Below, one piece after another: positions 11,232 through 49,994 of a stretch of 64,000 nt of DNA; the first letter of the stretch is position 1, and every line of letters begins with the position of its first letter. This DNA comes from Mytilus californianus (Eukaryota). The DNA lies in the NCBI RefSeq assembly GCF_021869535.1, contig NW_026262701.1, forward strand, positions 48,918,001 to 48,982,000, read 5' to 3'. Position numbers and translations under genes: made by a program. The notes beneath the pieces are model-generated. The model had not been told where the DNA came from, did not search any database, and worked only from the letters and a program-made list of their open reading frames with translations.

Positions 11232-11232
11232 A

Positions 11233-12701: not shown

Positions 12702-12714
12702 TTTTTTCGAACAT
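12702..12714 (-). pseudogene. cdc25: Cdc25 copy 1, coding micro-exon (ATG TTC GAA AAA A)
   Basis: Followed by a GTAAGT donor; phase 1 joins the main exon in frame (MFEKITEMDC...). TATA-like TTATAAAA at 12789-12796 and Inr-like TCATT 31 nt downstream. Confidence 0.75.
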
Positions 12715-13167
12715 TTTAATTGTGACCAGACAGTATTAGTATTGGCAGATGTCAGACAGAAAATGACCACTGTTGTAATCGCCAACTGTTTTATAAGCGG
12801 AAAATAATCATATTCTTCATCTCAATTACATCTAAACATTTGTATTACCCTTTATTAGATATAATTATGACTAATTATATTGTATATTCCATTGTCATAC
12901 AGGTAGATTTTTGTGATACAAAGAAATTATGTTGTAAAATATTGTAAACGAACGGTAAATACCTTAGTTAACGTCTGCAGAGTGTACATTTCCAGATGTT
13001 TCACTTTAAGATTGCATTAAAGTTAATCTTTTAAATATTAGAACCATAGGGTTAGGAAATTTGTTTATTATACATGATATATCATAAAAGATAGTTATCT
13101 GCAATAATCTATTTCGTTTATAATATGTTTGATGATTGGATCTCCGAAATCTACAGACGATCTCATT

Positions 13168-13598
13168 AGGAGACGACCAGTTGATTTTTTTTAATTTTAT
13201 TTTATCGATTTATTTATTTATTTTCGATTTAATTTTGTTTTGCTTTGTTTGTTTGTTTTTGCTTGTTTTTTGGTTGTTTGGTTTGTTGGTTGTTTTTTTA
13301 ATTTTTTTAAAATTTTTATTTTTTGGGGGGGGGGGGGGTCAGGAGTATTTTGAAAACGATTATCTGGGCCTGGTCTGGTAGAGGCTGAAAATAAATAACA
13401 TTACAAAACACAGGATGCAAATATTCTGCAACACAAAATGCAGGAAACAGTTGTGCACAAAAGTAAAAATAATTATTCGCGCGGCGAAGCTGCGGAAAAA
13501 AATAAGCGTGCATAGCAACATATGAAAATAAACAGTCAATCAGCACAAAATCCTCCTGCTCTGACCACCATCCCCAGAATATTAAATGGTCGTCCCCC
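13168..13598. mobile_element. MITE, PIF/Harbinger-like (second copy at ~24080-24520)
   Basis: Imperfect terminal inverted repeats GGAGACGACCAGTT / AAATGGTCGTCCCC with an internal poly-G tract; similar termini at 37838-38099. Confidence 0.55.
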
Positions 13599-16500: not shown

Positions 16501-18557
16501 AGTGTTTCTCATAATAAGCATAAAAACACCGCTGCATGAAAAAGAGCACGCCCAGTATCGAAAAACATTTGATTGTTGAATAAGACGTTCTTCGAACGTT
16601 ACCAATATGTTGTCAATAATTATAAACGAGCATTTTGATGGTGTCTGTTTCAGAAAACTTTTTGTTTAAATCAGAATTTTATTTTTGCAAAGTATAATGT
16701 CTGCCTTGGAAAGAAAAGATATTAGTACTTGCGATTGCCATTTGTTTGTATGAAACAAAACTTAAATATTTTATCAATCTCTTCTTTCAAAGCCTAGAAT
16801 GAAGAATACTTATGTATGGGTACATAATTTAAATGTTTTCAAACTATTGGACGAGTACACTGAGGGACAATGTTACAAAATATCGCTAGTGCCTCAAAAT
16901 ACATTAATTAATACTGTATAACTAAGTAAACTGTTTTCTTTTCTCAAATACATTTCAGAGAAAAAAAAGAATCCAGGGTTTTTCAAATGATGTGGCATTT
17001 AAATATTATTCTGATCATATCATAGTTGTAATGTAGTCTGCTATAGCTCTCACGTCCCCACGGCCCCATCAAGTCCTAAGAAATACCGTCTGACGTCAGG
17101 GCTGTCTCGGACAAGCTGTAATAAAGTTGCAGATTAATGCCATTTCTTCTTTCATTGTCCCTCAAATGATCAATTAAGTATTTATTTAGAGAATTTCAGA
17201 AAAACACGGATTTTGGGAAATTCCTCCCTAACACACAAACCTTGTAAAATTTAGGGTATTATATTTAAATTTTTTTAAATCCCTCGGCAATAACACGCAA
17301 ACTCATCGTTTCCATTTAAAATAATTATGCTTTCAAAATAATTTTGTGTAAATAACGATATTGAATTATTTTTATAAAATAATTTTCACAAATGTTGAAA
17401 AAATAAACAAATTAAAATCACTTGAATAATGGGCAGAGAGTAGAAGAACTTACTCCCTAATTGTAATTAACACACATGTAGTAACAATTAACTTGACTAA
17501 AACAACATCGAAATTGCATGTGTCTGCTCTTAACAATACCAAGTACCTATTAAGTAAGAAACTTACAACTCGTTAAGTACTTGTCTTTTTTATTTTCTCA
17601 CCTTTTATAATTTGGCATTTGAAATATTATAAATATTGCAGAATTTTCTAATATTTCATCATTTGTTCTTAGAGGATTGAAATAGGAGAAATAAATTCAT
17701 ATGCGAAAAGAGCAAGTTTTTAAAAAAAAGACGGTAAATTTTATTCGTTATTATCAATTTTTCACAAAGTAAGTTTTATCATTAAATTTTCTTTTGAAAC
17801 CATTTTTCCTTTCATATTTTTCATGTCGGGGCCTTTTTAGCAGACTATACGGTATGGGATTTTCTCATTGTTGAAGACCGTACGGTTAACTAGTATTGCT
17901 AACATCCACTTCATTTGAACTTTGGTGAATAGTTGTCTCATTGGCAATCATTCTACATCTCCTTATCTTTATAATTATCGAACACGAAAAAGTATTGATA
18001 TAAATTTATGCATTTGAAAAAGGGCAAAATTTTATGAAAACTTCTAAAATAATTATATTAATCATAATTATGATTATTGTTATTTCTGTTGTTTTTTCCC
18101 ATTGTAATGTCTTTTCTCTTACATCCACTTTGTATAATGACATTTTTACATCTGCACAATTGTATGACATTACACATGTTTTTCTTCCTTCAACTTAAAT
18201 TCATCTTATATTCTTAGACTGATTGCAACTACCTCGTAAAGACAAAAGTTTTTAAGACTCGATGCAAATATCTAAGCTACAGAAACAAGTGTAATACTAT
18301 ACTCTTGTTACCTTGAAGTCAATGACTAATCTTAGGAAGATATTAATCTTAAAGTTAATGTTTAGTATTTTTTTTTTATTTCTTGAAATTTCTTTTTTAA
18401 AATAAAAGGTTTAAATGCTGACGAAAATGTCAATTATTACTGTTTATATGTGCATTTTTTTAAAATTAAGTCGAGGAGATTAACTAGAGTTGTTTCGGCT
18501 GTTATCAATGCCCGTTAAAGGTCAAATTGAATAATTAGTTAAATCAAATTAATGAAA

Positions 18558-20385
18558 GATTCAAGATTCTTTATTTCTCAAACACCATATAGCTACAATG
18601 ATACAAAGAAGTTCATCAAAAGTTATAACATAACATAAACACACATGACAAGATGAGAAGAAAAAATAAAATAAAACAAAATAACACAGTAGTGGCGAAG
18701 AGTGGTGATTAACCAGGAAGACTTGCTTGAAAAGTTATAACCCTGATAAATTTGCACAGCTTTTTTAACTTATTTTTTAATTTTAACTGAAATAGTTTTC
18801 CAAACTTGAGTATATTACTTCTGTGCAAGAAAAAAGTATCCAAATATTGCGCTCGAAAGTTTGTCAAAGAACTACACTGCAAAATGTAATGAAATTCATC
18901 CCCAATCTCGTTACAATGACATAAATCACAATATCTATAGTTACGTTCAATTTTATTCCATCTACCAGTTTCGATGGGTAACTTGTGGTTTCCCGTTCTA
19001 AATCTACAATATTTTATTATATCTTTATCACTTAAAATATTCAGATATTCTTCATATTCAAATTTTTGTTTAAACAATTTGTAGGCCAAACCTTTTGATG
19101 AATAGTCAATATCTGCTCTCCATTTCTGTTGAAACTGATCAAATAACCTTTGTTTTAAACTAATACCCAACCATTTAGGATTAAAATTTCCTTGTGACAA
19201 CCATATATTGCTGTATCCACATCTATCTAATGTATCTTTAACGTATTTCAACCAATCTGACCTAAATTAGTTGTCAGAATTCTTCAAGAACATGTATCTG
19301 TATAATATTTTAGCAATCCTGTTATCATTCCCAATTACCATTTTTGACCAAAAATTAACCATACGCAGCTGTATATATAAAGACATGGGATAAATACCAA
19401 GTTCACCATAAATCATAAAATTATGTGTCGACTTCTTAAGGTTTAGTAATAGCTTACAAAATTTTAAGTGCACTCTTTCTATAATATCAGTATTACTGAA
19501 ACCCAAAATCTCGCATCCATATAGTAGGATTGGCTTCACAATTTTGTCAAATAGATCATATTGAGATTTCACTGACAAGTTGTGCAACCTCCCCTTTTTC
19601 AATACTTCATACATTGCTATATTTGCTTTTCGAACTAAAATGTTCTTGGCACTCATAAAGCTACCTGTTCTTGAAAAATTCAACCCAAGGTATGTCAGAT
19701 CATTAACTATCTCCAATGCATTTCCATCATATATAAAATTAATATTTTTGGGTAATCTACCACTAGAAAAAATTATAATCTTAGATTTACTAGTGTTTAC
19801 TTTCAATTTCCAGGTTCTGCAATAATCATGGAATATGTCTAATTGCAACTGTAGATCAGATGCATTATCAGAAAATAACACTGTATCATCTGCGTACAAA
19901 TGTAAAAATGTATCTCAAAAGTAAAGGAAAGGAATTCATAACACAAAAAGTTTTAGGTAGATATCAAACTCATCCTCTATTTCATCAGTAATAAAATTTA
20001 AACCACATACATTTTTTTCTTCAATAAACTGCTGAAGATCGTTCAAATATAACGAAAATAAAAAAGGAGACATATTTTCACCCTGTCTTACACCAATATT
20101 GCATGTAAAGTATTCTGACATTTCACCTTTATATACAATGCGAGATTTAATACCAGTGTACATATTAAAAATTACGTTATACATTTTACCGTTAATATCA
20201 TTTATAAGTAATTTATGCCAGAGACCCTCTCTCCAAACAGTACCAAAGGCTTTAGCAAAATCAACGAATGCACAGAATAGTTTCTTTTTCTTATTTTTCA
20301 TGATACTAATAAGCATGTAAATAACAAATAAGTAATCTGTAGTTGAATAACCTTCTCTGAAACCAGCTTGATTTTGACATAATAA
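18558..20385 (-). mobile_element. 5'-truncated non-LTR retrotransposon (LINE) ORF2 remnant
   Basis: RT motifs NQAGFR, FVDFAKAF, GVRQGENMSPFLF and YADD; C-terminal CxxC..EFHYILQC zinc knuckle; 3' end AATAAA plus a GAATCTTGAATC tail. Broken by stop codons and a 39-nt insert. Confidence 0.93.
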
Positions 20386-21194
20386 ACAAAAATCATCAGA
20401 ATTTCAGCGACTGTAGATTTCGGAGATCCAATCATCAAACATAATATAAATAAAACAGATTATCTCAGATAACTGACTTTTATGATATTTGTAGATACAA
20501 ATTTCCAAACCCTATGGTTCTTATATTTAAAAGATTAACTTTAAAGACATTTTAAGGTAAAACATCTTGAAATGTACACCCTGCAGACGTCAATTATCCG
20601 ATTTACCGTTCGTTCACAATATTTTACAACATATTTTTTTGGTATCACACAAATATACTTGTATGCCATGGCATGGTGATTTTGTGTTATAAAAATTCCT
20701 TTCCTTTACTTTTGAGATACATTTATACATTTGTAAACGTATACGAGTATATGTATATGATGTCATCGCGAAGCGTAAACGACAATAAAATACCAAACTA
20801 ACGACAAAAGTAGCAAAAGGTAAATGGTTAATATCTCCTAATACTTATACTCTTATTGCAAACCAGCAGATTCGTCCTGAACATGCATGAAATATTTGTC
20901 ACTGTACGTTAAGCAACCAACAATCAATCAAACCAGCAGGTAGTCGTTGTCTTGCTGTAACATTTAGTTGTCGTATTTCGTTATTTTTAATGAAGTTATA
21001 TCCCTATTTTTCTCTTTTTCAATTGTTCCACATTTTGGGTTTTTTCAGTGCCATGTACACGTATGACATGTCTTGTGGTGTGGTTTATGCTCATTGAAGA
21101 AGGTGATACGATGACCTCCAAAGATTCACTTTCTCGTCTTTTTGTATGTTAAATACTGTGCATGTATTTTACTTGATTTTCGGTTGATGTATTA

Positions 21195-21649
21195 CGGAAG
21201 CCCATTTAGGACCTCCCAAAATGTTTTTTGGGAATTCGATATCACGAGTTAAAAACGTTATCACGAATTGTAGAATTGGTTATAACAGATTTAATTCGTA
21301 ATCACGGTTTTATGGAATTATTTATAATAGTTTTTGTAATTCGTAATAACGAATTAAAAACATGATATCACTGATTAAATTCGTTATCGCAAATGTAAAT
21401 GTGTGCCATTTGTTATCACAAATTTGTGATTACTAATTGAACTCGTTATCACAGATTTTTGTAATTCGTGATATAGGTTTAAAATCGTTATAACAACTTG
21501 TATTACTCGTGACAACGAATAAAATTCGTGATAACAAAATCCATAAATTCGTTATCACGAATTTGATCCGTTATCACAATTTGTGATATCGATTTAAATT
21601 CGTGATTTCGATCACAAATATATTTTTAGAGGTCCTAAATGGGTTTCTG
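21195..21649. mobile_element. MITE with TA target duplication and internal repeat array
   Basis: TIRs CGGAAGCCCATTTAGGACCTC / GAGGTCCTAAATGGGTTTCTG, flanked by TA on both sides. The interior is degenerate TCGTTATCACGAAT-like units in both orientations. Confidence 0.8.
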
Positions 21650-21902
21650 TAATGTAAACACGTTCAAAAAGATTGCTGACAAAAACACTCTCAAGAAAAA
21701 ATTAGGAGATACATTTGGTCTTCAATCTATTTCAAAAGATTGGCAAGAAAACTTTTATTTCACTATTACATCCGAATTTTCTATCGACTTTCTAATGATT
21801 GAATATGAACACGCACAATAATAAAATATGATATCATTTAATGTTATATACAATTGTTGCAAATAAATACTGATATAGCACTATGACATGTAATTAATTA
21901 TG

Positions 21903-22845
21903 TCAATAAAACAAACGACCGAAGGATGATTTCAGTCGTTTTTGGCCAGCATACCATGATTTTGATTTGGTCCGGAAATGACGCAAGTCATCTTTGTGAT
22001 CTTTGCTCAACATTGGAACGTAATCCATTGGAGTACATAATGTCTTATAACTTCCATAAAAATCTTTGTATCCTCCCTTTAGAATATAAAGTTCAGGAAA
22101 ATACAAGGAAGGATAATTGTCAGCATTTAATTCTCTGTCATGGTTACGAAGAAAGCGGCACATTTTTGGTCCTCTCTCAGAAGAAAACTCACAATGGAAA
22201 ATAATTATGTCACGCTTTCCATCTGAGCGGGATGTATTTGGATTTTTTAATAGTTCTAAAATATCGTCCTTGTTATGAATATTTTCAGCGCCTGGTGACC
22301 ACCTTCAAACTCATACGAGTATCTACTGTCAATTATACGAACGCTTCCAATTGTATCATCGTATTTACCGTTTAAAACATGATTCAATGTGGCTGGAGTT
22401 ATGTAACTTAGGTCATGGCAGTGCCCCTGAATGGTTGGTAAACAACATTCTCCCTTTCCATCTCCAGTGAGTACGGCGCCTTGAACTACGACGTCTTCTG
22501 TTTTAATGAAGTTGTGCTTGATGGCGTCAACGGACAAGTTTTTATTGGTACTGAGAATCTGTGCATCAAACGACAAAGATTTTTTCAGTAATAGTTTTTG
22601 AGATCTGATGTACCTTTTCTTGCTATAAGATACAGGGGTATCACAGTCAGTATTGTTGTCAAATTTGTCGGCTCTTTTTCTCTTTGAGCTAAAGTCTGAT
22701 TTAAACAAACTTAGTGTTGGTGAGTCGTCAAATTCAGAAAAGTCCATACCAAGTCCGGAATCTTCGTCGAACAAGCTTTTTATAAAGTCTGGAGTTTTGG
22801 GAATTTTACGACAGTTATCTCCGGTTGAACAATCCATCTCGGTTA
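21903..22845 (-). pseudogene. cdc25: Cdc25 copy 2, main exon, frameshifted
   Basis: Full-length homolog, but ATACG is replaced by C (net -4 nt) at ~22294 within EGGHIRGA. The downstream HCEFSSERGP and the C-terminus are intact but out of frame. Confidence 0.93.
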
Positions 22846-23614
22846 CTGAAATAAAGAAAAACAATGAAAATATTTTTTCTGCAAAGTTTTTGTTTATTTG
22901 TAGATTGCCTGGAAATCATTCAAATAATTGAATAATTATAAAAATTTAATGTTCGGAATATAAAAACATATTAGCACGAGATACAAATAGAATTACTAGA
23001 CATGTCGACCCTTTTCCTAATGATTCTAGCCGGGTACAAATAATGTTTCTATCCGATACTGTATATGATTATATCTTTTATATTTATATGGTAATACCTT
23101 ACTATACTGTAAATAATTTGTGTTTGGACGTAAAGTGGGTTTTTGCGCTCTCAAACTTTTATGATATTTTTGGTTTTCTATACTCGGTAAGTTTCGAGCG
23201 TTCATGATGAATGTTTGTCCGGAAACTCGAGTATAGCGCACGAAAGTTTTGATTTTTAAAAACAATGCCGCTGAACTTACGTTATTAACGTCAATAGTGT
23301 GTAAGCATCAAAAGCTTTAAAATTGAAAAAAAAACTACTATATTAACGCAATTTTCTTACCAGATTACAAAAGCAGTTTAAAATATAAGGAGATGTGATG
23401 TAAGTGCCAACGAGACAACTGACCGCCACAGTCCAGATGGCTTTGATGTAAGCAACTATTATACCAAACAGTTTTTGACAATGAGAAAAACCCATGCCGT
23501 ATAGTCTGCTCATGCATAATTGTATTATGGATCATACCCTTATTACATATAACTGAAATACATAAAATATTTTGAAAATAATTATTAATTTTTCATTAAT
23601 ACATGTATACTTAC

Positions 23615-23627
23615 TTTTTTCGAACAT
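23615..23627 (-). pseudogene. cdc25: Cdc25 copy 2, coding micro-exon
   Basis: ATGTTCGAAAAAA followed by GTAAGT; intron 22846-23614 ends in TTTATTTCAG. Confidence 0.75.
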
Positions 23628-26600
23628 TTTAATTGTGACCAGACAGTATTAGTATTGGCAGATGTCAGACAGAAAATGACCACTGTTGTAATCGCCAACT
23701 GTTTAATAAGCGGAAAATAATCATATTCTTCATCTCAATTACATCTAAACATTTGTATTACCCTTTATTAGATATAATTATGACTAATTATATTGTATAT
23801 TCCATTGTCATACAGGTAGATTTTTGTGATACAAAGAAATTATGTTGTAAAATATTGTAAACGAACGGTAAATACCTTAGTTAACGTCTGCAGAGTGTAC
23901 ATTTCCAGATGTTTCACTTTAAGATTGCATTAAAGTTAATCTTTTAAATATTAGAACCATAGGGTTAGGAAATTTATTTATTATACATGAAATATCATAA
24001 AAGATAGTTATCTGCAATAATCTGTTTCGTTTATAATATGTTTGATGATTGGATCTCCGAAATCTACAGACGATCTCATTAGGAGACGACCAGTTGATTT
24101 TTTAAAATTTTATTTTATCGATTTATTTATTTATTTTCGATTTAATTTTGTTTTGCTTTGTTTGTTTGTTTTTGCTTGTTTTTTGGTTGTTTGGTTTGTT
24201 GGTTGTTTTTTTATTTTTTTTTAAATTTTTATTTGTTTTAGGGGGGGGGGGGGGGGGGGTCAGGAGTATTTTGAAAACGATTATCTGGGCCTGGTCTGGT
24301 AGAGGCTGAAAATAAATAACATAACAAAACACAGGATGCAAATATTCTGCAACACAAAATGCAGGAAACAGTTGTGCACAAAAGTAAAAATAATTATTCG
24401 CGCGGCGAAGCTGCGGAAAAAATAAGCGTGCATAGCAACATATGAAAATAAACAGTCAATCAGCACAAAATCCTCCTGCTCCAACCACCATCCTCAGAAT
24501 ATTAAATGGTCGTCCCCCTTTTTTTAATGTTTTATTTATCTATTGTGTGTTTGCTGGCGTCACGAGTGTATCTCGTCAACTTAAATTAACATTTTCATCA
24601 ACATTTGAACCTTTAACTGATGAAAAAAAATCAGATTTTCATCCTCATTAAAGATGGTCACTATTCTGTTTAAGGCAGCGTTGATACATCGCATTGAGAC
24701 GTAATGACTATTATAATCAATTAAGCGTATTATTTTACTTTTCTATACATTTAAAAGAAATATTAAAAAAATAATCACCAAAAATAATCTTTTTGACGGC
24801 GCGTAGTCAAAAAATAACTGTTTGAAGAAAGTGAACGTAGGAAAAATTACTCCTTTTTCCAGCGGAAAAGTGTGCATAAGCAAAATAACCGGCAATGTGC
24901 ACGTAGTAAAATAACACTTTCAAATTTGGCGTGCATTTATTTGCACGTGACATTTATTTGCACGTGAAAGACATAACTAGTTATCGTCTGGTGAAAATGG
25001 CGGTGGCCACAAGATTTGGTTGTATTTCTGATTTAGAAAAATAAAAGACTCTATATAACTATTCATGTGAAATTATTATTTGTCTCATAATAAGATAGTA
25101 CTTACGTGGTAAAAAAAAATATTCCCTTCTTTTTTTTCCAAAAACTAGCTTTTTGCGTATATCATGAATTTATTTTGTTTTAATTCAAAGAGAAAGAATG
25201 ATAAAATATTAGAAAACTCTGCAATATTTATAATATTTCAAACGTCAAATTATAAAAGGTGAGAAAATAAAAGACAAGTACTTAACGAGTTTTAAGTATT
25301 TTACTTAACAAGTACTTGGTATTGTTAAGAGCAGACACATGCAATTTCGATGTTGTTTTATTCTTGTTAATTGTTATTACAAGCGTGTTAATTACAATTA
25401 GGGAGTAAGTTCTGTTATTTTCTTTTTGTCCATTATTCAATTTTAATTATTTTTTTTTTTTTTTTTAAATTTCACATTGTTGAATTATTGAAAAAATAAT
25501 TATATTAAATCTGTATAAAAAAAAATCTCCAATTACACAAAACTCATATAGTATTTTCAGAGGCTCTTTTGAATGAAAGTTGACATAGAAATGATGAGTG
25601 CGTGTGTTGGTGGGATGCAAGAAAAAAATGTTCAAGTCGACATGCTTAGAATTCTTGACAAAAATCAATGCAGTTATTCTAAAATATTAATAAAAAAGGG
25701 GGGAGAGTAGTTTAACAATTGTTGTTGGTGATGGGGAAATTTCCAAAATTCCGTGTTTTTTTCTAAAACTATTTGAAAAAAGATATGTTTAATTGATTAT
25801 TTGAATGACAATGAAAAAATAAGCTTTATTTCTCTGAGACTTTATTACAAAAGTTACTATTCTCAGATTGCTACGACATCTAGCGGCCTTTTATAAGACT
25901 GACAATATACAAATAAGAAGATGTGGTATTATTGCCAATGAAACAACTCTCCACCAGAGACCAAATGACGTAGAAATTAACAACTATAGGTCACCGTACT
26001 GCCTTCAATAATGAGCAAAAGCCCATACGATATAGTAAGATACAAGACTACATTACAACTTTATGATCAAATAATACTTAAATGCCACACCATTTGAAAA
26101 AATACTGGATTTCTAGTATTTTCTTTTCGAAAATATATTTGGGAAAGAGAACAGTTGATACAGTTGTACTATAAAAAGCTATTCAAGGTGTCTTAAAGTT
26201 AAAGTTGAAGTCTTCCCTTCGAATGTTTTACGGACGATATCATGATTTGGTTTATGTAGAGTAGATCGTAACTTACACGTAATAAAGTGTCCTTTCATGT
26301 ATTAGTCGAAGATGAAAATTGACAACCAAGTTTGACTGTTGCCCCTGTTCAACAAGATACACACATGTTCTATTATATCCCTAATGATGTCAGTCCAGAT
26401 TTCCCTTCCAACAATCCGATCAATGCATCCACTATGCAGGATTTATTTGTCTATGTATAGTTTAATTGTATTCTCGTTCTGATTATGGAAGAAATAGTTT
26501 CCACTGGACGTTAAGCATGAATAAAATCAACAATCAACTACTAAAATCTTCCCTTTTATGTAAAACAATTGTATAGAAAGCTTTTTTGGTTGACTTTTCC

Positions 26601-26998
26601 CCATTATCAAATCAACGGAGAAGTTTCGATTATTGTTTGCTTAAATGTCCAGTGACAAAGACTTCATGCATATTCAATTCACGGATAAAGACCCCAAGTA
26701 AATTAGAATACACCAAAGGGAAATAGAGCCCAGTGATAAATATGATGGTTTTTTTTTATTATTATTGAATACTGTACTATGAACATTATTAATTTTCATA
26801 CCAAAAAAAATCCGAAACTAGTAACACAAATGTGTTGGAACTTTAAAAGACATTTTATAGATACTCATCGAAAAATTAACTATTTTGTTGTAAAGTTTAA
26901 TTCCCAACTGACCCTATAATTGTCAACTTGTAGATTTAAGTCATATATATGGAGCAGACATTAAATATGATGAGTTAATCGCTTTTCAACTGATTTTT

Positions 26999-27780
26999 AC
27001 ATCGCGATGACCTTGAGGTCATCCCGATGTATTGCTATCGCCTAGATTTCCATTATGTAAATTAGTTTTGGGTTTGTAACCGATCTATAAACATGATAAA
27101 TACGCGCACATAAACGAGTGCAAAATAACATTCCTTATCGTTTGATATAAATACATCTCTTCAATGAATACTGATAAAAATATTTTTGTTTACAACATAA
27201 ATTAATAATATGAAAATGTTTTGTAGTTAGATATATATATATAAGTAAAAAATCATTGATAATATCAATGCACACGTACCGAAAAATTGTGTTAAAGCAT
27301 GCGGAAGAATATCTCAAAGAACGTTTTGTGAAAATACCGTCAAGGACCGGTAACTCTGTAATTGATTTTGCGGGAAAATATGAATGCCTACTCGTATCCA
27401 ATCTTAGAAAAATCGAATTTTTACAGAAAAGTGTCCACCAAGCACTTGCATTGCACTATTTTTAGAATAGTAGAATAGAATGATATACAAATGGATTCAA
27501 ATCATATATATATATGTAACTGTTATTTTAATATAATATAAACAACAACTCAGTGTATACTGATTTGTATCACTACAATATAATAGTTATTACGGTGAAG
27601 TTGAATTTCCTGTCATTTATTCATCATCCACGCACGAACTTGTCTCAGAAAAAAATATATCTCTGTACATTAACCTCAGTTTTAGGTAAAGAGATATGTT
27701 GTTTTTTTCTGAGACAAGTGCTTTTGACCATCCTCAAGAACTTGTGGTCATCCGATGTTCAGTACTTCAGTACTTTGATT
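26999..27780. mobile_element. 782-bp insertion specific to unit B (possibly a non-autonomous Helentron-like element)
   Basis: Empty site GATTTTT|ATACTC at ~16127 in unit A. Inserted in a T-run with no TSD; short hairpins and a shared TTG(A/T)GGTCATCC(C)GATGT motif near both ends. Confidence 0.6.
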
Positions 27781-30321
27781 ATACTCGTTATTGGTTTTTG
27801 TATATTGTGCTGTTACCCCACTGCCTCTGGTTAGGGGAGGGTTGCTATGCGGTATGGGTTTAATTTTGCTCTTTGTTGAAGGACGTACGGTGTCCTATCG
27901 TTGCGAACAATCTACGTCATTTGTTCTTTAGTGGAGAATTGTCTCAATGTCCAGCATACCATATCTTCTTATTTTCATATCAAATGTATATATGGTGTCG
28001 TTTATTTCAAGTCAATGGGATAGACAACAAATTTATTCACTTTACAATGAATTATTCGATGAAATGACATCATCTACATGTATTTAGCGGATCGTGTAGA
28101 ATAAAGGTCAATGTCAGCTTCACTTAATTGTACTTGAAAAGGTCCTCAATGAAGTGTTTCTCATAATAAGCATAAAAACACCGCTGCATGAAAAAGAGCA
28201 CGCCTAGTATCGAAAAACATTTGATTGTTGAATAACACGCTCTTCGAACGTTACCAATATGTTGTCCAATAATAAACGAGCATTTTGATGGTGTCTGTTT
28301 CAGAAAACATTTTATTTAAATCAGAATTTTATTTTTGCAAAGTATAATGTCTGCCTTGCTAAGAAAAGATATTAGTACTTGCGATTGCCATTTGTTTGTA
28401 TGAAACAAAACTTAAATATTTTATCAACCTCTTCTTTCAAAGCCTAGAATGAAGAATACTTATGTATGGGTACATAATTTAAATATTTTCAAACTATTGC
28501 ACGAGTACGCTGAGGGACAATGTTACAAAATATCGCTAGTGCCTCAAAATACATTAATTAATACGGTATAACTAAGTATACTGTTCTTTTTCTCAAATAC
28601 ATTTCAGAGAAAAATAAAAATCCAGAGTTTTTTTCAAATGGTGTGACACTTAAGTATTATTCTGACCATATCACAGTTGTAATGTATAGTCCGCTATTGC
28701 TCTCGCGTCCTCACGGCCCCTGCAAGTCCTAAGAAATACCGTCAGACGTCAGGGCTGTCTCGGACAAGCTGTAATAAAGTTGCAGATTAATGCCATTTCT
28801 TCTTTCATTCACGTCCCTCAAATGATCAATTAAGTATTTATTAAGAGAATTTCAGAAAAACACGAATTTTGGGAAATTCCTCCCTAACACACAAGCCTTG
28901 TAAAATTTAGGGTTTTATATTTACTTTTTTTTAAATCCCTCCGTAAACTAATCGTTTCCATTTAAAATAATTATGCTTTCAAAATGATTTTGTGTAATTA
29001 ACGATATTGAATTATTTTTATGAAATTTTCAAAAATGTTGAAAAAATAAACAAATTAAAATTACTTGAATAATGGGCAGAGAGTAGAAGAACTTACTCCC
29101 TAATCGTAATTAACACACATGTAGTAACAATTAACTTGACTAAAACAACATCGAAATTGCATGTGTCTGCTCTTAACAATACCAAGTACCTATTAAGTAA
29201 AATACTTACAACTCGTTAAGTACTTGTCTTTTTTATTTTCTCACCTTTTATAATTTGGCATTTGAAATATTATAAATATTGCAGAATTTTCTAATATTTT
29301 ATCATTTGTTCATAGAGAATTGAAATAGAAGAAATCAATTCATGTACGAGAAAAGCAAGTTTTTAAAGAAAGACGGGAAATTTTATTCGTTATTATCAAT
29401 TTTTCACAAAGTAAGTTTTATCAATAAATTTTCTTTTAAAACCATTTTTTTTCTCCATATTTTTCATGTGGGGGCCTTTTTAGCAGACTATACGGTATGG
29501 GTTTCTCTCATTGTTGAAGACCGTACGGTTAACTATAATTGCTTACATCCACTTCATTTGAACTTTGGTGAATAGTTGTCTCATTGGCAATCATACCACA
29601 TCTCCTTATTTTTATTATAATCGAACACGAAAAAGTATTGATATAAATTTATACATTTGAAAAGGGGCAGAATTTTATGATAACTGCTAAAATAATTATA
29701 TTAATCATAATTATGATTATTGTTATTCCTGTTGTTTTTTTCCATTGTAATGTCTTTTCTCTTACATCCACTTTGTATAATGACATTTTTACATCTGCAC
29801 AATTGTATGACATTACACATCTTAAATTCATCTTATATTCTTAGACTGAATGCAACTACCTCGTAAAGACAAAAGTTTTTAAGACTCGATGCAAATATAC
29901 TCTTGCTACCTTGAAGTTAATGACTAATCTTAGGTAGATATTAATCTTAAAGTTAAAGATTTCAGAGATCCAATCATTAAACACAATATAAATAAAACAG
30001 ATTATCGCAGATAACTGACTTTTATGATATTTGTAGATACAAATTTCCTAACCCTATGGTTCTAATATTTAAAAGATTAACTTTAAAGACATTTTAAGGT
30101 GAAGCATCTTGAAATGTACACCCTGCAGACGTCAATTATGTGATTTACCGTTCGTTTACAATATTTTACAACATTATTTCGGTTATTTCTTGGTATCACA
30201 CAAATCTACCTGTATGACAATGGAATATACAATATAATTAATCATAATTATATCTAATAAAAGGTATTACAAATGTTAAGATGTAATTGAGATGAAGAAT
30301 ATGATTATTTTCGGCTCAGAA

Positions 30322-30355
30322 TATAAATAGTTGGCGATTACAATTTGTAGTCATT
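30322..30355 (+). promoter_or_regulatory. Putative TATA + Inr core promoter of the intact Cdc25
   Basis: TATAAATA at 30322-30329 and TCATT with its A at 30353 (31-nt spacing). The same spacing is kept in the diverged minus-strand copies. Confidence 0.55.
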
Positions 30356-30402
30356 TTCTGTCTGACATCTGTCATTACTAATACTGTCTGGTCACAATTA
30401 AA

Positions 30403-30415
30403 ATGTTCGAAAAAA
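30403..30415 (+). CDS. cdc25: Cdc25 phosphatase, coding exon 1 (MFEK+)
   Basis: ATG TTC GAA AAA A|GTAAGT, conserved in all three copies; splices in frame (A|TA = Ile) to exon 2. Confidence 0.78.
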
Positions 30416-30690
30416 GTAAGTTTACTTATTAAACAATGATAATCAATTCAAATATTTTTAAGTTTATTTAAATATAAGGTACTATATATGTCTCTGGTAA
30501 TAATAATATTATTTATTATTAAGCATGACTTTTTTTTGTACAGTATCTGCAACGACGCAATCGAGAAACATTCATCGATGAAAAAAAGCTTCGTTGATAT
30601 AACACAACACTTTCATTTTCATATTAACGCTTTTCTACTTGCACACCGTATATTTCCATATACACAGCAACACAACTTTAACTGAACTAA

Positions 30691-30916
30691 GACGAAAACT
30701 ATAACATTGCAGGTCACCGTTTTACCATACCATCAACCACGATATAAAAAAATACCAAGACGCACCGCAAGACATGTAATACTGAAAAAAGGAAATCTGA
30801 AATAAAACTAGAAAGAGAAATCCAAAAGGCTAACTGAAGTAAATTACTTGAAACGAAAATTAAATGTAAAAAAAAGACGACGTGCATTGTTTGAGTTGCA
30901 ATATGTGTTTGAACTC
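30691..30916. repeat. Direct repeat R1 (partner R2 at 32695-32918)
   Basis: Shared blocks ATAACATTGC(A/G)GGTCACCGT, AGACGCACC(G/T)CAAGACATG and GAAAGAGAAATCCAA(A/C)AGG; roughly 75% identical. Confidence 0.8.
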
Positions 30917-31003
30917 TGGTTCTCTCCGGGCACTCCGGCTTACTCCACCAATAACAACTGACCGCCACGAAATAGCACAATAGTGTTGAAAGTGGCGTTA
31001 AAC

Positions 31004-31035
<32 letters not shown>
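30917..31035 (+). mobile_element. 5'-truncated SINE (V-domain-like) in the Cdc25 intron
   Basis: TCTCCGGGCACTCCGGCTT..CTCCACC core and (CAAT)n tail; 14-bp TSD ATGTGTTTGAACTC at 30903-30916 and 31036-31049. Confidence 0.8.
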
Positions 31036-31037
<2 letters not shown>

Positions 31038-31151
31038 GTGTTTGAACTCAACAAAAGCATTTATAATTACACTTAAAATAAAATTCAATCACAAACTGTT
31101 CCATTGAGGATCGTATGAAGAGATTTCCCCATTAAAACTACTAACTATAAA

Positions 31152-31310
31152 AACGGAGATGTGGTATGATTGCCAATGAGACAACTATCCATCAAAGTTA
31201 AAATGAAGTGGATGTAAGCAATTATAGGAAACCGTACGGCATACAACAATGAGAAAAACCCATACCGTATAGTCGGCTATAAAAGGCCCCGACATGAAAA
31301 ATATGAAACT
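31152..31310 (+). repeat. Short interspersed repeat family (AGATGTGGTATGATTGCCAATGAGACAAC...)
   Basis: At least 10 related copies in the window, e.g. ~8770, 12475, 15040, 23390, 25917 (+) and ~16300, 17950, 27960, 29590, 41900, 46430 (-). Confidence 0.75.
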
Positions 31311-31407
31311 AGTTCGTATTTTTACATTGATTGTTCAGGCCACCTACAAGTAAATAAAACCTATTCAATTGTAGAAAAAAAATATTTATTGTTTTTCTTT
31401 ATTTCAG

Positions 31408-32357
31408 TAAATGAGATGGATTGTTTAACCGGAGATAACTGTCACCACAAAGTTCCAAGAACTCCAGACTTTATAAAAAGCTTGTTCGACGAAGATTCCG
31501 GACTTGGTATGGACTTTAATGCATTTGACGATTCACCGACACTGAGTCTGTTCAATTCAGAACTTAGCTCAAAGAGAAAAAGAGCCGACAAATTAGACAC
31601 TAATACTGACTCTGATACTCCTGTATCTTACAGCAAGAAAAGATACATCAGATCTCAAAAACTTTTACTGAAAAAATCTTTGTCTTTCGATGCTCAGATT
31701 CTCAGTACCAGTAAAGACTTGTCAACTGACGCCAGCAAGCACAATGACATTAAAACAGAAGACGTCTTAGTTCAAGCCGCCGTACTCACTGGAGATGGAA
31801 AAGAAGTATGTTGTTTACAAACCGTTCAGGGGCACTGTCATGACCTAAGATACATAACTCCAGCCACCATGAATGATGTTTTAAACGGGAAATACGAGCA
31901 TACAATTGGCAGCTTTCGTATAATTGACAGTAGATACTCGTATGAGTTTGAAGGTGGTCACATACGAGGCGCTGAAAATATTCATAACAAGGACGATATT
32001 TTAGAACTATTAAAAAATCCAAATACATCCCGCTCAGATGGAAAGCGTGACATAATTATTTTCCATTGTGAGTTTTCTTCCGAGAGAGGACCAAAAATGT
32101 GCCGCTTTCTCCGTAATCATGACAGAGAATTAAATGCTGAAAATTATCCTTCCCTGTATTTTCCTGAACTTTATATTCTAAAGGGAGGATACAAAGATTT
32201 TTATGGAAGTTATAAGACATTATGTACTCCAATGGATTACGTTCCAATGTTGAGCAAAGATCACAAAGACGATTTGCGTCATTTCCGGTCCAAATCTAAA
32301 TCATGGTATGCTGGCCAAAAACGACTGAAATCTTCCTCCGGTCGATTGTTCTATTGA
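31408..32357 (+). CDS. cdc25: M-phase inducer phosphatase (Cdc25), coding exon 2; spliced protein 320 aa
   Basis: Uninterrupted ORF with IIDSRYSYEFEGGHIRGA, catalytic HCEFSSERGP (Cys at 32067-32069), YPSLYFPELYILKGGY and C-terminal FRSKSKSW. N-terminal DSG, TP/SP and basic KRKR motifs. Polypyrimidine tract and AG acceptor at 31406-31407. Confidence 0.96.
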
Positions 32358-32694
32358 CATGAAAATAATAGTGCTAAATCTGTATTTAATTGTACCAATT
32401 GTATATAAAATTAAATTATATCATAGTATAAGTTTCATGGTGCGTGTTCATGTTTTTTAGTCCATAAAACATTCTGAAACAAAAGAATGAATAATGTAGT
32501 TTTAAACTATGTCAAAAGAATATATTCGAAGAAATAGCTTGTTTTTTAAATTGACTCTAGTATCCGGCTAAGGATAACTCACTGTATCTTCTACTTGTTT
32601 CACTTGAAATTCCTTTGTGTCAGTCATCTTTACTAAGATGTATACCGCGACTGCAAATCTCGCTCACTGAAAATACATACATTGCATACCAAAG

Positions 32695-32918
32695 GACGAG
32701 AACAATAACATTGCGGGTCACCGTATTACCAACATTTCAGATAAAAAACAAAGAGACGCACCTCAAGACATGCCGTAATGAAAAATAAGAAAACAAAATG
32801 TGAAACAAAACTGGAAAGAGAAATCCAACAGGATAACCGAAGTAACCAAATGTAAAAGAAAGATATTATGAACCGTTTGGGTTGTAATAGATATATACTT
32901 ATTTTGTGGACTCAACCT
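32695..32918. repeat. Direct repeat R2 (partner of 30691-30916)
   Basis: See R1. Confidence 0.8.
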
Positions 32919-33931
32919 GTAAGTCTCAAGACTTTCTTCTTTATTCAGCTATACATATTTATATATATATATTCTCTTTGAGCGCTTTCGTGTTTTCGAA
33001 AGATTTACATCGGTATATTTTTAGAACAAGGGACACCACATATTTTGATTAATTATTCGGAAGCAGAAACTAATCACGTAATTCTACATTGCGATTAAAA
33101 ATACCATTGAATTATTCCTTCGGGTGAACGTTGTCATAACTGAGTTAAATTTAATGTTATCTCTGTCATCAAAAGGTTTACATTCACCATCATGATTGAT
33201 TGACCGACGTGGAATATTGGTGTAAAAAATATTCCATTTGTTGTGGCCACGCTACAAGATTTAACTTTCCATCGACACTCAACGGGTTCCATTATTAAAG
33301 CGGAAACTAATTGACCTTCTTGAGCACCTCAATTTAAATTTACCCACAGTTTAAGTTTAAAATCGTTGTTTTTCTGTGTGGCGTTTTATGCTCTTTATTT
33401 TTTATGATTTTAACCCACATATCCCTAATTTGGTAAAATTGCATCTCTGCTTTTGTGTGTAATATTAATAGAATATAACCATTAAGTTGGAAATCATCTT
33501 TCAATTTACCGTAGAAACACGTCACGACAATTGTAACCACACATTCAGGTCTATAACGAACTCAAACTCGATAATAATAATTGTTTTTTCCTATTAGTAA
33601 ATAAATATATTTTTCGTGTTTTTTTTCAAAGCAATTTGTGAAATGATAGGTGGGTAAAATAATAGTTGAAACTTTCTGCAAACTTCATTTTTTGAGGAAT
33701 TGAAAAAAATCATTTTTGGTACACATTGGATTTTGCCATCTCCATATGAAGGTCTCTGCATGCTGCAGTTTAAGCCGCAACACGAAAGAATACATAAAGA
33801 TGTTTCTAGAGTAAGAAAATGAATTTTTTGATGCAGTTAATTGGAGATAAGAACAGTTACTTATATACCTACTCCTGCATATGTCTTTCTTACGACCATT
33901 TATTCTGTTCACCTTAAAATCATTAATACAT

Positions 33932-34920
33932 ATTGGTCACTGAACTAAATCATTGACGTAAGTTGGTAACTGTAGTAAATCATTGACGTATGTTGGTAAC
34001 TGTACTAAATCATTGACGTATGTTGGTTACTGTACTAAATCATTGCACATGACGCATATTGGTTACTGTGCTAAATCATTGCACATGACGTATATTGGTC
34101 ACTGAACTAAATCATTGACGCATGTTGGTTATTGTACTAAATCATTGACGTATGTTGGTTACTATACTAAATCATTGCACATGGCGCATATTGGTTACTG
34201 TATTAAATCATTGACGAGTGGCTGCTAGCTTGACCCTAGCACTAAATCATTGACGCATGTTGATTACTGAACTAAATCATTAATGCAGGTTGGTTACTGT
34301 ACTAAATCATTGACGCATGTTGGTTACTGTACTAAATCATTGACGCATGTTGGTTACTGTACTAAATCATTTACGCATTTTGGTTACTGTACTAAATCAT
34401 TGACGCATGTTGATTACTGAACTAAATCATTAATGCAGGTTGGTTACTGTACTAAATCATTGACGCATGTTGGTAACTGTACTAAATCATTGACGCATGT
34501 TGGTAACTGTACTAAATCATTGACGCATGTTGGTTACTGTACTAAATCATTGACGCATGTTGGTTACTGTACTAAATCATTTACGCATTTTGGTTACTGT
34601 ACTAAATCATTGACGCATGTTGATTACTGAACTAAATCATTAATGCAGGTTGGTTACTGTACTAAATCATTGACGCATGTTGGTAACTGTACTAAATCAT
34701 TGACGCATTTTGGTTACTGTGCTAAATTGTTGATGCATGTTGGTTACTGTACTAAATCATTGACGTATGTTGGTTACACTGTACTAAATCATTGAAGCAT
34801 GTTGGTTACTGTACTAAATCATTGACGCATGCTGGTTACTGTACTGAATCATTGACGTATGTTGGTTACTGTAATTAATCATTCACGCATGCTGTTTACT
34901 GCACTTAATCATTGATACAT
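33932..34920. repeat. 30-bp minisatellite, about 32 units
   Basis: Consensus TTGGTTACTGTACTAAATCATTGACGCATG, with some 35-bp variants and recurring diagnostic units. Confidence 0.97.
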
Positions 34921-44615: not shown

Positions 44616-44697
44616 AATCAATGCAAAAGTATGGGAGGCTACCTTGTGAAGATTACAGACTCAGCAGAAAACTCGTGGGTTCGTGACATGCTTACTA
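44616..44697 (+). pseudogene. C-type lectin 1, exon 3
   Basis: CCAG|NQCKSMGGYLVKITDSAENSWVRDMLT|GTAAGT, the typical CTLD helix region. Confidence 0.88.

Positions 44698-45288: not shown

Positions 45289-45337
<49 letters not shown>
45289..45337. repeat. (TAT)n microsatellite
   Basis: Direct reading. Confidence 0.95.
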
Positions 45338-49985: not shown

Positions 49986-49994
49986 TTGCACAGT

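What the first reader, a model, noticed from the sequence alone, without database searches (positions are those of the whole stretch)
21790..32460. Head-to-head ~10.7-kb palindrome carrying two retrogene-like Cdc25 copies
Seen in the sequence: Cdc25 copy 2 (-) and the intact copy (+) point away from each other. Inverted homology runs inward in blocks: 21790-22880 vs 31365-32460, 23540-24065 vs 29957-30480, 25170-25440 vs 29050-29320, and 25720-25860 vs 28780-28890, at roughly 80-90% identity. The same inner inverted blocks recur in unit A (e.g. 14260-14520 vs 17410-17670). Established: Cdc25 activates Cdk1 for mitotic and meiotic entry, and palindromic amplicons with arm-to-arm conversion are known for germline genes on mammalian sex chromosomes. 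Inference: this is an amplified, rapidly turning-over family of Cdc25 paralogs, possibly specific to the germline or early embryo, separate from the canonical multi-exon gene.
Basis: partly seen in the sequence, partly recalled or inferred. Interest (0 to 1): 0.8.

Follow-up and report, generated by a model that had tools for sequence, protein, structure and literature searches.

The report
Old decayed Cdc25 inverted duplication, mussel
Two single-exon copies of a short Cdc25 cell-cycle phosphatase gene in the California mussel do lie head-to-head in a real but old and decayed inverted duplication that was later copied as a unit, so it is a fairly ordinary gene-family expansion and not a palindrome kept uniform by arm-to-arm conversion.

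Summary
Window 21802-26169 and 28566-32454 are colinear inverted arms (gene 89%, inner blocks 87, 82, 77 and 69% identical) around a ~2.4-kb spacer. The inner blocks occur genome-wide only in these Cdc25 modules, so they are arm remnants, not dispersed repeats.

The analogy with sex-chromosome palindromes fails. Synonymous divergence between arms is about 0.20. Left and right arms form separate clades, each containing the matching arm of the orthologous Mytilus galloprovincialis module. AU tests reject trees that join the two arms. The higher identity of the catalytic half reflects purifying selection (dN/dS 0.04-0.1).

The module exists four times on this chromosome, plus three solo copies. 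Window 11233-20668 is a partial direct tandem copy of the left arm, spacer and inner right arm. Right-arm genes are intact in 4 of 4 modules. Left-arm copies are broken in 3 of 5, including both in this window.

The coding sequence is one exon, whereas oyster and scallop relatives have 7-8 coding exons, so "retrogene-like" is supported. No poly(A) tail or target-site duplication survives.

Expression is untested: one RNA run gave no reads on the gene. The scan has already described sister arrays of intronless Cdc25 elsewhere in this genome.

The parts
31416..32357 (+). Right-arm (R) gene: intact single-exon coding sequence of a compact Cdc25-like phosphatase, 313 aa plus stop. Catalytic rhodanese domain with HCEFSSERGP. 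Short N-terminal region with invariant DSGLGMD, KRKR and several S/T-P sites.
   Evidence: It is 99.0% identical in coding sequence to the R copy at C121:52.747 Mb and 94-95% to the R copies at 41.39 and 48.65 Mb. dN/dS is 0.3 overall and about 0.1 in the catalytic half.
31390..31407 (+). Polypyrimidine tract plus CAG, a predicted splice acceptor 8 nt upstream of the ATG. This implies a 5'-UTR intron and an upstream non-coding exon.
   Evidence: Sequence. A public contig (L046) matches a solo-type copy at 95% only from this point on and carries unrelated sequence upstream. The M. galloprovincialis gene model starts about 590 nt upstream of its ATG. This is an inference, not shown by reads here.
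21903..22837 (-). Left-arm (L) gene copy 2: a pseudogene. A 4-nt deletion at coding nt 545 shifts the frame and gives a stop at codon 194. It also carries the 3-nt deletion typical of the L and solo clades.
   Evidence: It is 98.5% identical to the intact L copy at C121:52.756 Mb and 92.5% to the R gene of its own module.
21802..26169 (-). Left arm of the decayed palindrome. It holds the gene plus about 100 nt of 3' flank (21802-22918), block a (23554/23605-24065), block b (25113-25501), a weak block (25711-25849) and block c (26049-26169). These are separated by arm-specific sequence that includes dispersed elements (23381-23510, 25905-26036).
26170..28565 (.). Central spacer. About 1.6 kb is module-specific sequence. 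It also holds a young high-copy transposon at 26994-27780, which is absent from the empty site in unit A at about 16128.
   Evidence: (at least 2873 candidate copies, the best at 99%), and (empty site vs filled site). The centre is the part that differs most from the sister module (7-16% vs 1-2% elsewhere).
28566..32454 (+). Right arm of the decayed palindrome. It holds block c (28566-28686), the weak block (28770-28905), block b (29010-29387), block a (29957-30469) and the gene plus flanks (31328-32454). Two copies of a dispersed ~160-nt element (29456-29616, 31146-31305) and a (CAAT)8 run (31006-31037) are arm-specific.
11233..20668 (-). Unit A: a partial direct tandem copy of 21961-30219, that is the L arm, spacer and inner R arm without the R gene. 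It contains gene copy 1 (11233-11922), which lacks 184 nt including the catalytic loop and is cut off at its 3' end at 11233.
   Evidence: Unit A is absent from the sister duplication at 52.74-52.77 Mb. Its R-type blocks group with R arms in the trees.
18359..20407 (-). A 5'-truncated LINE fragment (reverse-transcriptase ORFs) inserted into unit A after the tandem duplication. A poly(T) run lies at its left junction.
   Evidence: (RVT_1 hits), and (junctions compared with the uninterrupted site at 29956/29957).
20674..21801 (.). Ancestral 3' flank of the L gene, outside the palindrome. The tandem-duplication junction lies at 20668/20674.
   Evidence: (colinear with the 52.75-Mb, 48.66-Mb and solo loci).
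33917..34915 (.). Satellite of a 30-bp unit repeated about 32 times (consensus contains TGACG), 1.56 kb downstream of the R gene. It sits at the same position in all four modules and in M. galloprovincialis.
   Evidence: It has no miR-2 K-box motifs.

Best explanation
The region is a fossil inverted duplication.

Origin of the gene. An intronless compact Cdc25 gene, probably made by retroposition of a short multi-exon Cdc25 early in the mussel family, is the starting point. This origin is inferred.

The inverted duplication. The gene was copied at the DNA level together with about 3.3 kb of upstream sequence into a head-to-head pair around a ~1.6-kb centre. This happened before M. californianus and M. 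galloprovincialis split (shown). Since then the arms have diverged independently at roughly the neutral rate and collected separate transposon insertions. There has been no arm-to-arm homogenisation (shown).

Copying of the module. The whole ~14-kb module was later copied as a unit by segmental duplication on the same chromosome. There are four modules in alternating orientation. The youngest pair differs by only 1-2% and lies inside an inverted duplication of at least 40 kb. In this window, part of the module was also duplicated in tandem as unit A (shown).

Fate of the copies. The right-arm gene is intact and under purifying selection in all four modules. Left-arm copies are decaying: 3 of 5 are broken, including both in this window. 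The functional output of 21.8-32.5 kb is therefore one gene, at 31416-32357.

Likely function. Its product most likely dephosphorylates Cdk1 on Thr14/Tyr15 to trigger M phase, as other Cdc25s do. It has only a minimal regulatory N-terminus. Function is inferred from homology. Tissue and stage of expression are unknown.
For: Structure:
- Colinear inverted blocks.
- The blocks occur only in Cdc25 modules genome-wide.

Age and independence of the arms:
- dS between L and R is 0.20-0.24.
- Non-coding blocks are 77-87% identical, with the weak innermost block at 69%.
- L and R clades are separate. The R clade includes the M. galloprovincialis R arm (100/99 for the N-terminal half of the coding sequence; 100/100 for block b). 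The L clade includes the M. galloprovincialis L arm (91/88).
- AU tests reject joining the arms: window module p=6e-58 (block b), 1e-4 (N half) and 0.02 (catalytic half); M. galloprovincialis module p=2e-4 and 0.008.
- The orthologous module in M. galloprovincialis is colinear through the spacer and the downstream satellite, and its arms are only 82-87% identical.

Copying of the module:
- Colinear modules lie at C121 41.38, 48.65 and 52.75 Mb.
- They pair as ((window, 52.75), (41.38, 48.65)) for both arms.
- Window-to-52.75 divergence is a uniform 1-2% in coding and non-coding sequence.
- The duplication extends over window 1-9483 and 20674-43786.

Gene fates.

Selection: dN/dS is 0.04-0.14 in the catalytic half and 0.3-0.5 in the N half.

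Cdc25 identity.

Intron loss:
- The coding sequence is contiguous in four Mytilus species, while oyster has 7 and scallop 8 coding exons.
- A single-ORF genomic contig from a hydrothermal-vent metagenome at 69% identity suggests the intronless form is older than the genus.
Against: - No poly(A) remnant or target-site duplication was found at the 3' end, and the family tree does not resolve a parent gene. Retroposition therefore rests on wholesale intron loss alone.
- In the catalytic half the L/R split is unresolved and dS is somewhat lower (0.16-0.17 vs 0.22). An old exchange there, before the window/52.75 split, cannot be excluded.
- Unit A's two parts differ from unit B by 1.2% and 4.2%, so the tandem copy may not have arisen in one simple step.
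- The 52.75-Mb sister differs by less than the reported 2.73% heterozygosity of this species (PMC9710001). I could not check read depth to rule out a misplaced allelic copy.
- No transcript evidence for the window's own gene.
Confidence: 0.8

Rival explanations
1. An active palindromic amplicon of the mammalian sex-chromosome type: the arms are kept alike by ongoing arm-to-arm gene conversion, which protects a germline gene family.
For: Head-to-head colinear arms around a spacer. The catalytic half of the two genes is 96.6% identical vs 89.6% in the N half. At the 48.65-Mb module the two arms are the closest pair in the catalytic half (97.4%), and a clade joining them is not rejected there (p=0.28).
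Against: - Arm identity is 69-89%, not above 99%.
- dS is 0.20.
- The identity contrast between gene halves comes from dN (0.007-0.010 vs 0.077-0.094), which indicates selection.
- Arms group by position across modules and species.
- AU tests reject joining the arms.
- Three of five left-arm copies are broken, and conversion from the intact arm would tend to repair them.
Confidence: 0.03
2. Not a palindrome at all: two Cdc25 copies happen to lie in opposite orientation, and the inner inverted matches are copies of dispersed transposable elements.
For: The region is full of repeats. It has a ~130-160-nt element with enormous depth in all runs, a 787-bp transposon with thousands of copies and a LINE fragment. 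One inverted match near the centre is such an element and is not colinear.
Against: Blocks a, b and c are found only in the Cdc25 modules of C121, in both orientations at colinear positions, in all four modules and in M. galloprovincialis. Their arm-to-arm divergence matches the genes' dS.
Confidence: 0.04
3. Part of the apparent amplification is an assembly artefact. The 52.74-52.77-Mb sister, and possibly unit A, would be allelic haplotypes wrongly kept in the primary assembly of a highly heterozygous animal.
For: Sister-to-window divergence of 1-2% and unit A-to-B divergence of 1.2% are below the reported heterozygosity of 2.73%. Unit A is present in one copy and absent from the other, as in a presence/absence polymorphism.
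Against: - The assembly used HiFi reads, purge_dups, contig N50 16 Mb and has 0.9% duplicated BUSCOs.
- There are no gaps in the fetched loci.
- The similarity stops after about 40 kb and the next window segment matches a different place, 52.27 Mb.
- Unit A and unit B lie within the span of single long reads.
- In a DNA run, gene-body contigs have 2-3.5 times the depth of the unique flanks.
- The palindrome itself is independently present in M. galloprovincialis.
Confidence: 0.08
4. The inverted arrangement has a function. Read-through transcription across a broken left copy and the right gene would give hairpin or antisense RNA, processed into small RNAs that dampen the Cdc25 family, like Drosophila hairpin-RNA loci.
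For: 299 of 1107 21-mers of the right gene arm have a perfect complement in the left arm, the longest being 115 nt. The left copy is a pseudogene yet is retained in the module.
Against: - There is no RNA over either the gene or the spacer in the RNA run examined.
- The arms diverge at the neutral rate with no sign of selection for complementarity.
- The genes are divergent with an 8.6-kb separation between their ATGs, so a single transcript through both arms needs an unobserved promoter.
- Left copies are intact in other modules and in M. galloprovincialis.
Confidence: 0.04

Closest known systems
Human CDC25A/B/C, Drosophila string and twine (M-phase inducer phosphatases)
   Same: The catalytic domain aligns end to end with human CDC25A, B and C structures at E about 1e-55. 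The HCEFSSERGP active-site loop and the flanking RY(S/P)YE(F/Y)xGGHI and YPE(L/M)YILKGGYK(D/E)F motifs are conserved. As in flies and worms, several paralogues exist (my own knowledge).
   Different: It is only 313 aa. The Pfam N-terminal regulatory domain PF06617 is not detected. The coding sequence is one exon. It belongs to a family of at least 30 single-exon-type loci plus about 9 multi-exon loci in one genome, against 1-4 genes in well-studied animals (my own knowledge).
Palindromes of mammalian and avian sex chromosomes (e.g. human Y P1-P8)
   Same: Inverted arms carry a gene copy each around a unique spacer. The module occurs in a region of repeated segmental duplication.
   Different: Those arms are above 99.9% identical through gene conversion (my own knowledge). 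Here the arms are 69-89% identical, older than a species split, and not homogenised. The arms are about 4 kb, not tens to thousands of kb. No link to a sex chromosome is known, and germline expression is untested.
Other intronless compact Cdc25 arrays in this mussel genome (C87 1.18-1.21 Mb, C99 19.13-19.24 Mb, C1), noted earlier by this scan (s1-287922, s1-330629)
   Same: Single-exon short Cdc25 genes amplified locally by DNA-level duplication.
   Different: Those are direct tandem arrays of 257-291-aa genes, only 54-59% identical to this subfamily and in a separate clade. This subfamily is organised as head-to-head modules and solo copies. It lacks the miR-2 (K-box) motif arrays reported downstream of those genes.
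Retrogenes that acquired a 5'-UTR intron and an upstream promoter
   Same: All coding introns of relatives are absent. A splice acceptor sits 8 nt before the ATG.
   Different: No poly(A) tract, target-site duplication or identified parent gene. The copies seen here arose by DNA duplication of gene plus flanks, not by repeated retroposition.

Membership tests
Cdc25 (M-phase inducer) phosphatases | Rhodanese-fold catalytic domain homologous to CDC25A/B/C | tested here: met
   Pfam PF00581 at E 1e-11. phmmer against PDB gives CDC25C, B and A chains at E 8e-56 to 5e-49 over residues 123-305.
Cdc25 (M-phase inducer) phosphatases | Active-site HCX5R loop (HCEFSSERGP) | tested here: met
   Present and invariant in the R gene and in orthologues of five Mytilus species. 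It is deleted in copy 1 and lies downstream of the frameshift in copy 2.
Cdc25 (M-phase inducer) phosphatases | Long N-terminal regulatory domain (Pfam PF06617, M-inducer_phosp) | tested here: not met
   No hit. Only about 120 residues precede the catalytic domain. Short motifs (DSGLGMD, KRKR, S/T-P sites) are invariant among orthologues, but their roles are inferred.
Cdc25 (M-phase inducer) phosphatases | Dephosphorylates Cdk1 pThr14/pTyr15 and drives M-phase entry | not testable with these tools
   Needs an enzyme assay or oocyte injection.
Retrogene (processed gene copy) | Loss of all introns that interrupt the coding sequence in relatives | tested here: met
   The coding sequence is contiguous in M. 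californianus, M. galloprovincialis, M. trossulus and M. edulis. Oyster P0049 has 7 coding exons and scallop P0028 has 8. Multi-exon Cdc25 loci exist in the same genome.
Retrogene (processed gene copy) | Poly(A) tract and target-site duplications at the insertion | tested here: not met
   The 3' ends of nine copies aligned show only an ATTAAA signal and AT-rich sequence, with no poly(A) run and no flanking direct repeats. This is expected to be eroded given the age.
Retrogene (processed gene copy) | Identifiable intron-bearing parent gene | tested here: inconclusive
   In a quick tree of 65 proteins this subfamily sits on a long branch with weakly supported deep nodes.
Conversion-maintained palindromic amplicon (sex-chromosome type) | Colinear inverted arms around a unique spacer | tested here: met
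Conversion-maintained palindromic amplicon (sex-chromosome type) | Near-identical arms | tested here: not met
   Arm identity is 69-89% and dS is 0.20.
Conversion-maintained palindromic amplicon (sex-chromosome type) | Arms of one palindrome group together in trees (concerted evolution) | tested here: not met
   Arms group by side across modules and species. AU tests reject joining the arms.
Conversion-maintained palindromic amplicon (sex-chromosome type) | Germline-restricted expression of the arm genes | tested here: inconclusive
   There is zero depth on the gene in a 6% sample of one RNA run of unknown tissue. Contig-based RNA runs show only traces at depth 2.

The most novel reading that the evidence does not exclude
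The compact, intronless, amplified Cdc25 paralogues could be maternal or germline drivers of the rapid meiotic and cleavage divisions of mussels. The retained inverted left-arm pseudogenes would then supply hairpin or antisense small RNAs that tune their dosage. This would be an independently evolved analogue of Drosophila hairpin-RNA control of young testis gene families.
Probability: 0.04. Interest if true: 0.65.

Novelty: new member of a known kind. Interest (0 to 1): 0.3.

Why it matters
It documents how a cell-cycle regulator family expands in a bivalve. An old head-to-head gene pair behaves as a duplication unit: one side is kept functional everywhere and the other decays. Some copies are younger than allelic variation in the species. 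That is useful for annotation, because two of the three copies in this window are pseudogenes. It is also useful for studies of presence/absence variation in mussels, and as a pointer to an unusually large Cdc25 repertoire whose expression in oocytes and embryos deserves a look. It does not reveal a new mechanism. The attractive parallel with conversion-maintained palindromes is refuted.

Tried and rejected
- Arm-to-arm conversion in the catalytic half (sibling note s1-320724). dN/dS partitioning shows the extra identity comes from low dN; dS is only slightly lower. The window's arms pair with their counterparts at 52.75 Mb, not with each other.\n- Gene conversion between modules to explain 99% coding identity between the window R gene and the 52.747-Mb R gene. 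Rejected: substitution-only divergence is 1-2% in the flanks too. BLAST's 95% figure came from gaps and divergent ends.\n- Poly(A) tract or target-site duplication at the 3' ends: none found. One row of that alignment (the 52.75-Mb L copy) used wrong coordinates and was ignored.\n- miR-2 K-box arrays like those reported for sister arrays: none in 32358-34915.\n- Rfam families and tRNAs in 9000-36500: none.\n- Expression: the RNA run gave reads only on dispersed elements. The other 'RNA?' runs look like low-coverage DNA.\n- Family tree to find the parent gene: only the quick search finished and the deep nodes are weak.\n- Literature: no paper in the held library describes a Cdc25 expansion or retrogene in mussels. 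One clam oocyte study notes several CDC25 probes more abundant in spawned oocytes and seven CDC25 genes in the Pacific oyster.\n- The search of window 44001-64000 against the genome was swamped by transposons and says little about absence.
Full report
**Source.** The window is C121:48,918,001-48,982,000 of a 1.65-Gb, 175-sequence assembly. Its best protein matches are Mytilus californianus "M-phase inducer phosphatase-like" models on a record of the same length, 122,239,455 bp. Size and species agree with the published reference genome (PMC9710001).

**Observation.**
- ORF listing shows three Cdc25-like reading frames. An intact one lies at 31389-32357 (+); the real ATG is at 31416, giving 313 aa. 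Two interrupted ones lie at 22256-22864 (-) and 11233-11949 (-).

| Left arm | Right arm | Identity |
|---|---|---|
| 21802-22918 | 32454-31328 | 89.4% |
| 23605-24065 | 30425-29957 | 87% |
| 25113-25501 | 29387-29010 | 82% |
| 25711-25849 | 28905-28770 | 69% |

- All five are colinear for an inverted repeat.
- One more central match (25905-26020 vs 27980-27864) is out of order. It belongs to a ~130-160-nt element scattered through the window and present at huge depth in every sequencing run.
It fails. Block a has 13 places in the genome and block b has 11 plus one 55-nt stray. Every one lies inside a Cdc25 module on C121. Block c behaves the same way.
- The arms are therefore 21802-26169 and 28566-32454, around a 2.4-kb centre. 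Of that centre, 787 bp (26994-27780) is a young transposon with thousands of 99% copies and an empty site in unit A.

**What else is in 11-33 kb.**
- The strongest similarity is direct, not inverted. 11416-16128 matches 22331-26999 with 1.2% substitutions. 16126-18358 matches 27779-29956 with 4.2%. 20408-20668 matches 29957-30219.
- Unit A (11233-20668) is thus a partial tandem copy of the left arm, the spacer and the inner right arm. It is interrupted by a 5'-truncated LINE (18359-20407; RVT_1 hits), and the junction is at 20668/20674.
- Gene copy 1 lacks 184 nt that include the catalytic loop, and it is cut at 11233.
- Copy 2 has a 4-nt deletion at coding nt 545 and stops at codon 194.
- Only the right-arm gene of this window is intact.

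**The module is a repeated unit.**
- A protein search of the whole genome gives 62 matches. Twelve loci of this subfamily lie on C121, at 81-100% amino-acid identity to the query. About 18 further single-exon-type loci lie in clusters on C1, C87, C99 and C132, at 52-61% identity. About 9 multi-exon loci lie on C99 and C2.
- On C121, (-)/(+) pairs recur at 41.378/41.391, 48.652/48.663 and 52.747/52.756 Mb.
- I fetched these loci. All three are colinear with window 21.7-34.9 kb through both arms, the spacer and the 30-bp satellite downstream of the right gene.
- ATG-to-ATG distances are 8.6-11.6 kb.
- Three solo copies (48.875, 52.815 and 52.894 Mb) carry a single arm.
- The window (1-9483 and 20674-43786, without unit A) lies in an inverted duplication of at least 40 kb with 52,735,759-52,774,823.
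- Substitution-only divergence along that pair is a uniform 1-2% in genes and flanks alike, rising to 7-16% only at the palindrome centre. No conversion between modules is needed to explain the 99.0% coding identity.

**Are the arms homogenised? No.**
- In coding sequence the left copies are 95-98.5% alike. The right copies are 94-99% alike. Left against right is 89-92.5%.
- Nei-Gojobori estimates give dS of 0.20-0.24 between left and right.
- The catalytic half is more alike than the N-terminal half (96.6% vs 89.6% for the window's pair). The reason is that dN falls from 0.08-0.09 to 0.007-0.010. dS changes little, 0.22 to 0.16-0.17. That is purifying selection (dN/dS 0.04-0.14), not a conversion tract.
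- Maximum-likelihood trees of the N-terminal half and of non-coding block b put left and right arms in separate clades.
- M. galloprovincialis has the orthologous module (OZ263150.1 at 56.34 Mb): a (-) and a (+) rhodanese gene, colinear spacer and the same satellite. Its arms are only 82-87% identical.
- The M. galloprovincialis right arm falls in the right clade (100/99 and 100/100). Its left arm falls with the left clade in block b (91/88).
- AU tests reject trees that join the two arms:

| Module | Data set | p (AU) |
|---|---|---|
| Window | Block b | 6e-58 |
| Window | N-terminal half | 1e-4 |
| Window | Catalytic half | 0.02 |
| M. galloprovincialis | Block b | 2e-4 |
| M. galloprovincialis | N-terminal half | 0.008 |

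- The inverted duplication therefore predates the split of these species, and the arms have evolved independently since.
- In the catalytic half the deeper left/right structure is unresolved, so an old exchange there cannot be excluded. At the 48.65-Mb module a recent one is not rejected (p=0.28).

**Fate of the copies.**
- Right-arm genes are intact in 4 of 4 modules.
- Left-arm copies: the 52.756-Mb copy is intact. The 41.378-Mb copy is intact but loses its last residue. The 48.663-Mb copy has a 1-nt deletion. Both window copies are broken.
- Solo copies are intact in 2 of 3.

**The gene.**
- The 313-aa product has a rhodanese domain.
- It aligns with human CDC25C, B and A catalytic-domain structures at E about 1e-55, with HCEFSSERGP and the neighbouring motifs conserved.
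- The Pfam N-terminal regulatory domain is not detected.
- Among orthologues of five Mytilus species, the motifs DSGLGMD and KRKR and several S/T-P sites in the short N-terminus are invariant. Reading them as a degron, a nuclear-localisation signal and CDK sites is my inference.

**Retrogene-like?**
- The coding sequence is contiguous in four Mytilus species.
- The related short Cdc25 of Crassostrea angulata (317 aa) has 7 coding exons, and that of Pecten maximus (348 aa) has 8. Multi-exon loci also exist in this genome.
- A 2.3-kb genomic contig from a hydrothermal-vent metagenome, presumably host DNA of a vent mussel, carries a single 299-aa ORF at 69% identity. This suggests the intronless form is older than the genus.
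- No poly(A) tract or target-site duplication remains.
- A quick 65-protein tree leaves the parent unresolved. This subfamily sits on a long branch, apart from the 257-291-aa intronless mussel clade.
- A polypyrimidine tract and CAG lie 8 nt before the ATG. A public contig (L046) switches to unrelated sequence exactly there. The M. galloprovincialis gene model starts about 590 nt upstream of its ATG. Together these point to a 5'-UTR intron.
- The copies studied here arose by DNA duplication of gene plus flanks, not by repeated retroposition.

**Expression.**
- I had one run search and one read-laying run.
- Raw RNA reads (X21, about 6% of the run, tissue not given) cover only the dispersed elements and give zero depth on 31410-32481.
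- Two RNA contig sets show traces at depth 2.
- A DNA run shows flanks at depth about 19-21 and gene contigs at 41-68, as expected for collapsed near-identical copies.
- The germline or embryo idea therefore remains untested.
- A clam study reports several CDC25 probes more abundant in spawned oocytes and cites seven CDC25 genes in the Pacific oyster (PMC4254928). I found no paper on a mussel Cdc25 expansion.

**Caveat.** The species' heterozygosity is reported as 2.73%. That exceeds the 1-2% divergence between the window and the 52.75-Mb sister, and between parts of units A and B. The assembly's quality (HiFi, purge_dups, 0.9% duplicated BUSCOs), the absence of gaps in the fetched loci and the limited, mosaic extent of the similarity make a misplaced haplotype unlikely. 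I could not test read depth.

**Earlier notes.** The scan has already described direct tandem arrays of other intronless compact Cdc25 genes in this genome and called them an old mussel retrogene family. My oyster and scallop exon check agrees. The miR-2 motif arrays reported for those arrays are absent here. None of those notes covers the head-to-head module.

**Verdict.** The region is a decayed, pre-speciation inverted duplication of a retrogene-like compact Cdc25. It was later propagated as a module and partly duplicated in tandem, and one functional gene survives in this interval. It is a new member of a known kind and of modest interest.

Noticed in passing
window 33917-34915: Satellite of a 30-bp unit repeated about 32 times, with a TGACG core (22 copies of the motif). 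It lies 1.56 kb downstream of the right-arm gene and is kept at the same position in all four modules and in M. galloprovincialis. Its function, if any, is unknown.
   Followed up: partly
window 10927-11234: A near-perfect hairpin (two 135-nt arms, 99% complementary, 38-nt loop) lies exactly where gene copy 1 is truncated. It may be a foldback element or a rearrangement scar.
   Followed up: no
window 26994-27780: A very young 787-bp non-coding transposon with at least 2873 candidate copies genome-wide, the best at 99% identity. It inserted into unit B after the tandem duplication. A second copy sits at a different position in the 48.66-Mb module.
   Followed up: yes
window 29456-29616, 31146-31305, 25905-26036, 15026-15157 and others: A dispersed ~130-160-nt element at extreme depth in both DNA and RNA runs, SINE- or MITE-like. 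Rfam and ARAGORN find nothing in it. One copy lies about 110 nt upstream of the intact gene's ATG.
   Followed up: partly
L046 (Logan contig of SRR13891816), 1-1910: The contig joins 950 nt of unrelated sequence to a solo-type Cdc25 coding sequence exactly at the predicted acceptor. It carries a 408-aa ORF that runs from the upstream part into the N-terminal half. This could be a spliced or chimeric transcript of another Mytilus. The upstream part matches C121:53.26 Mb at only 75%.
   Followed up: partly
G000 C99:120,800,713-120,802,939 (-) and 120,816,928-120,817,443 (+): Two multi-exon Cdc25 loci also lie in divergent orientation about 14 kb apart. There are at least 9 multi-exon Cdc25 loci in all, itself a large number for an animal genome.
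   Followed up: no
window 16126-18358 vs 27779-29956: The right part of unit A differs from unit B by 4.2%, against 1.2% for the left part. The tandem copy may be a mosaic, or the left part was later homogenised.
   Followed up: partly
window 58666-64000: This stretch matches C121:52,274,880-52,281,483 in direct orientation at 86-96%. That is a different place from the 52.74-Mb sister of the palindrome, so the neighbourhood is a patchwork of segmental duplications.
   Followed up: no
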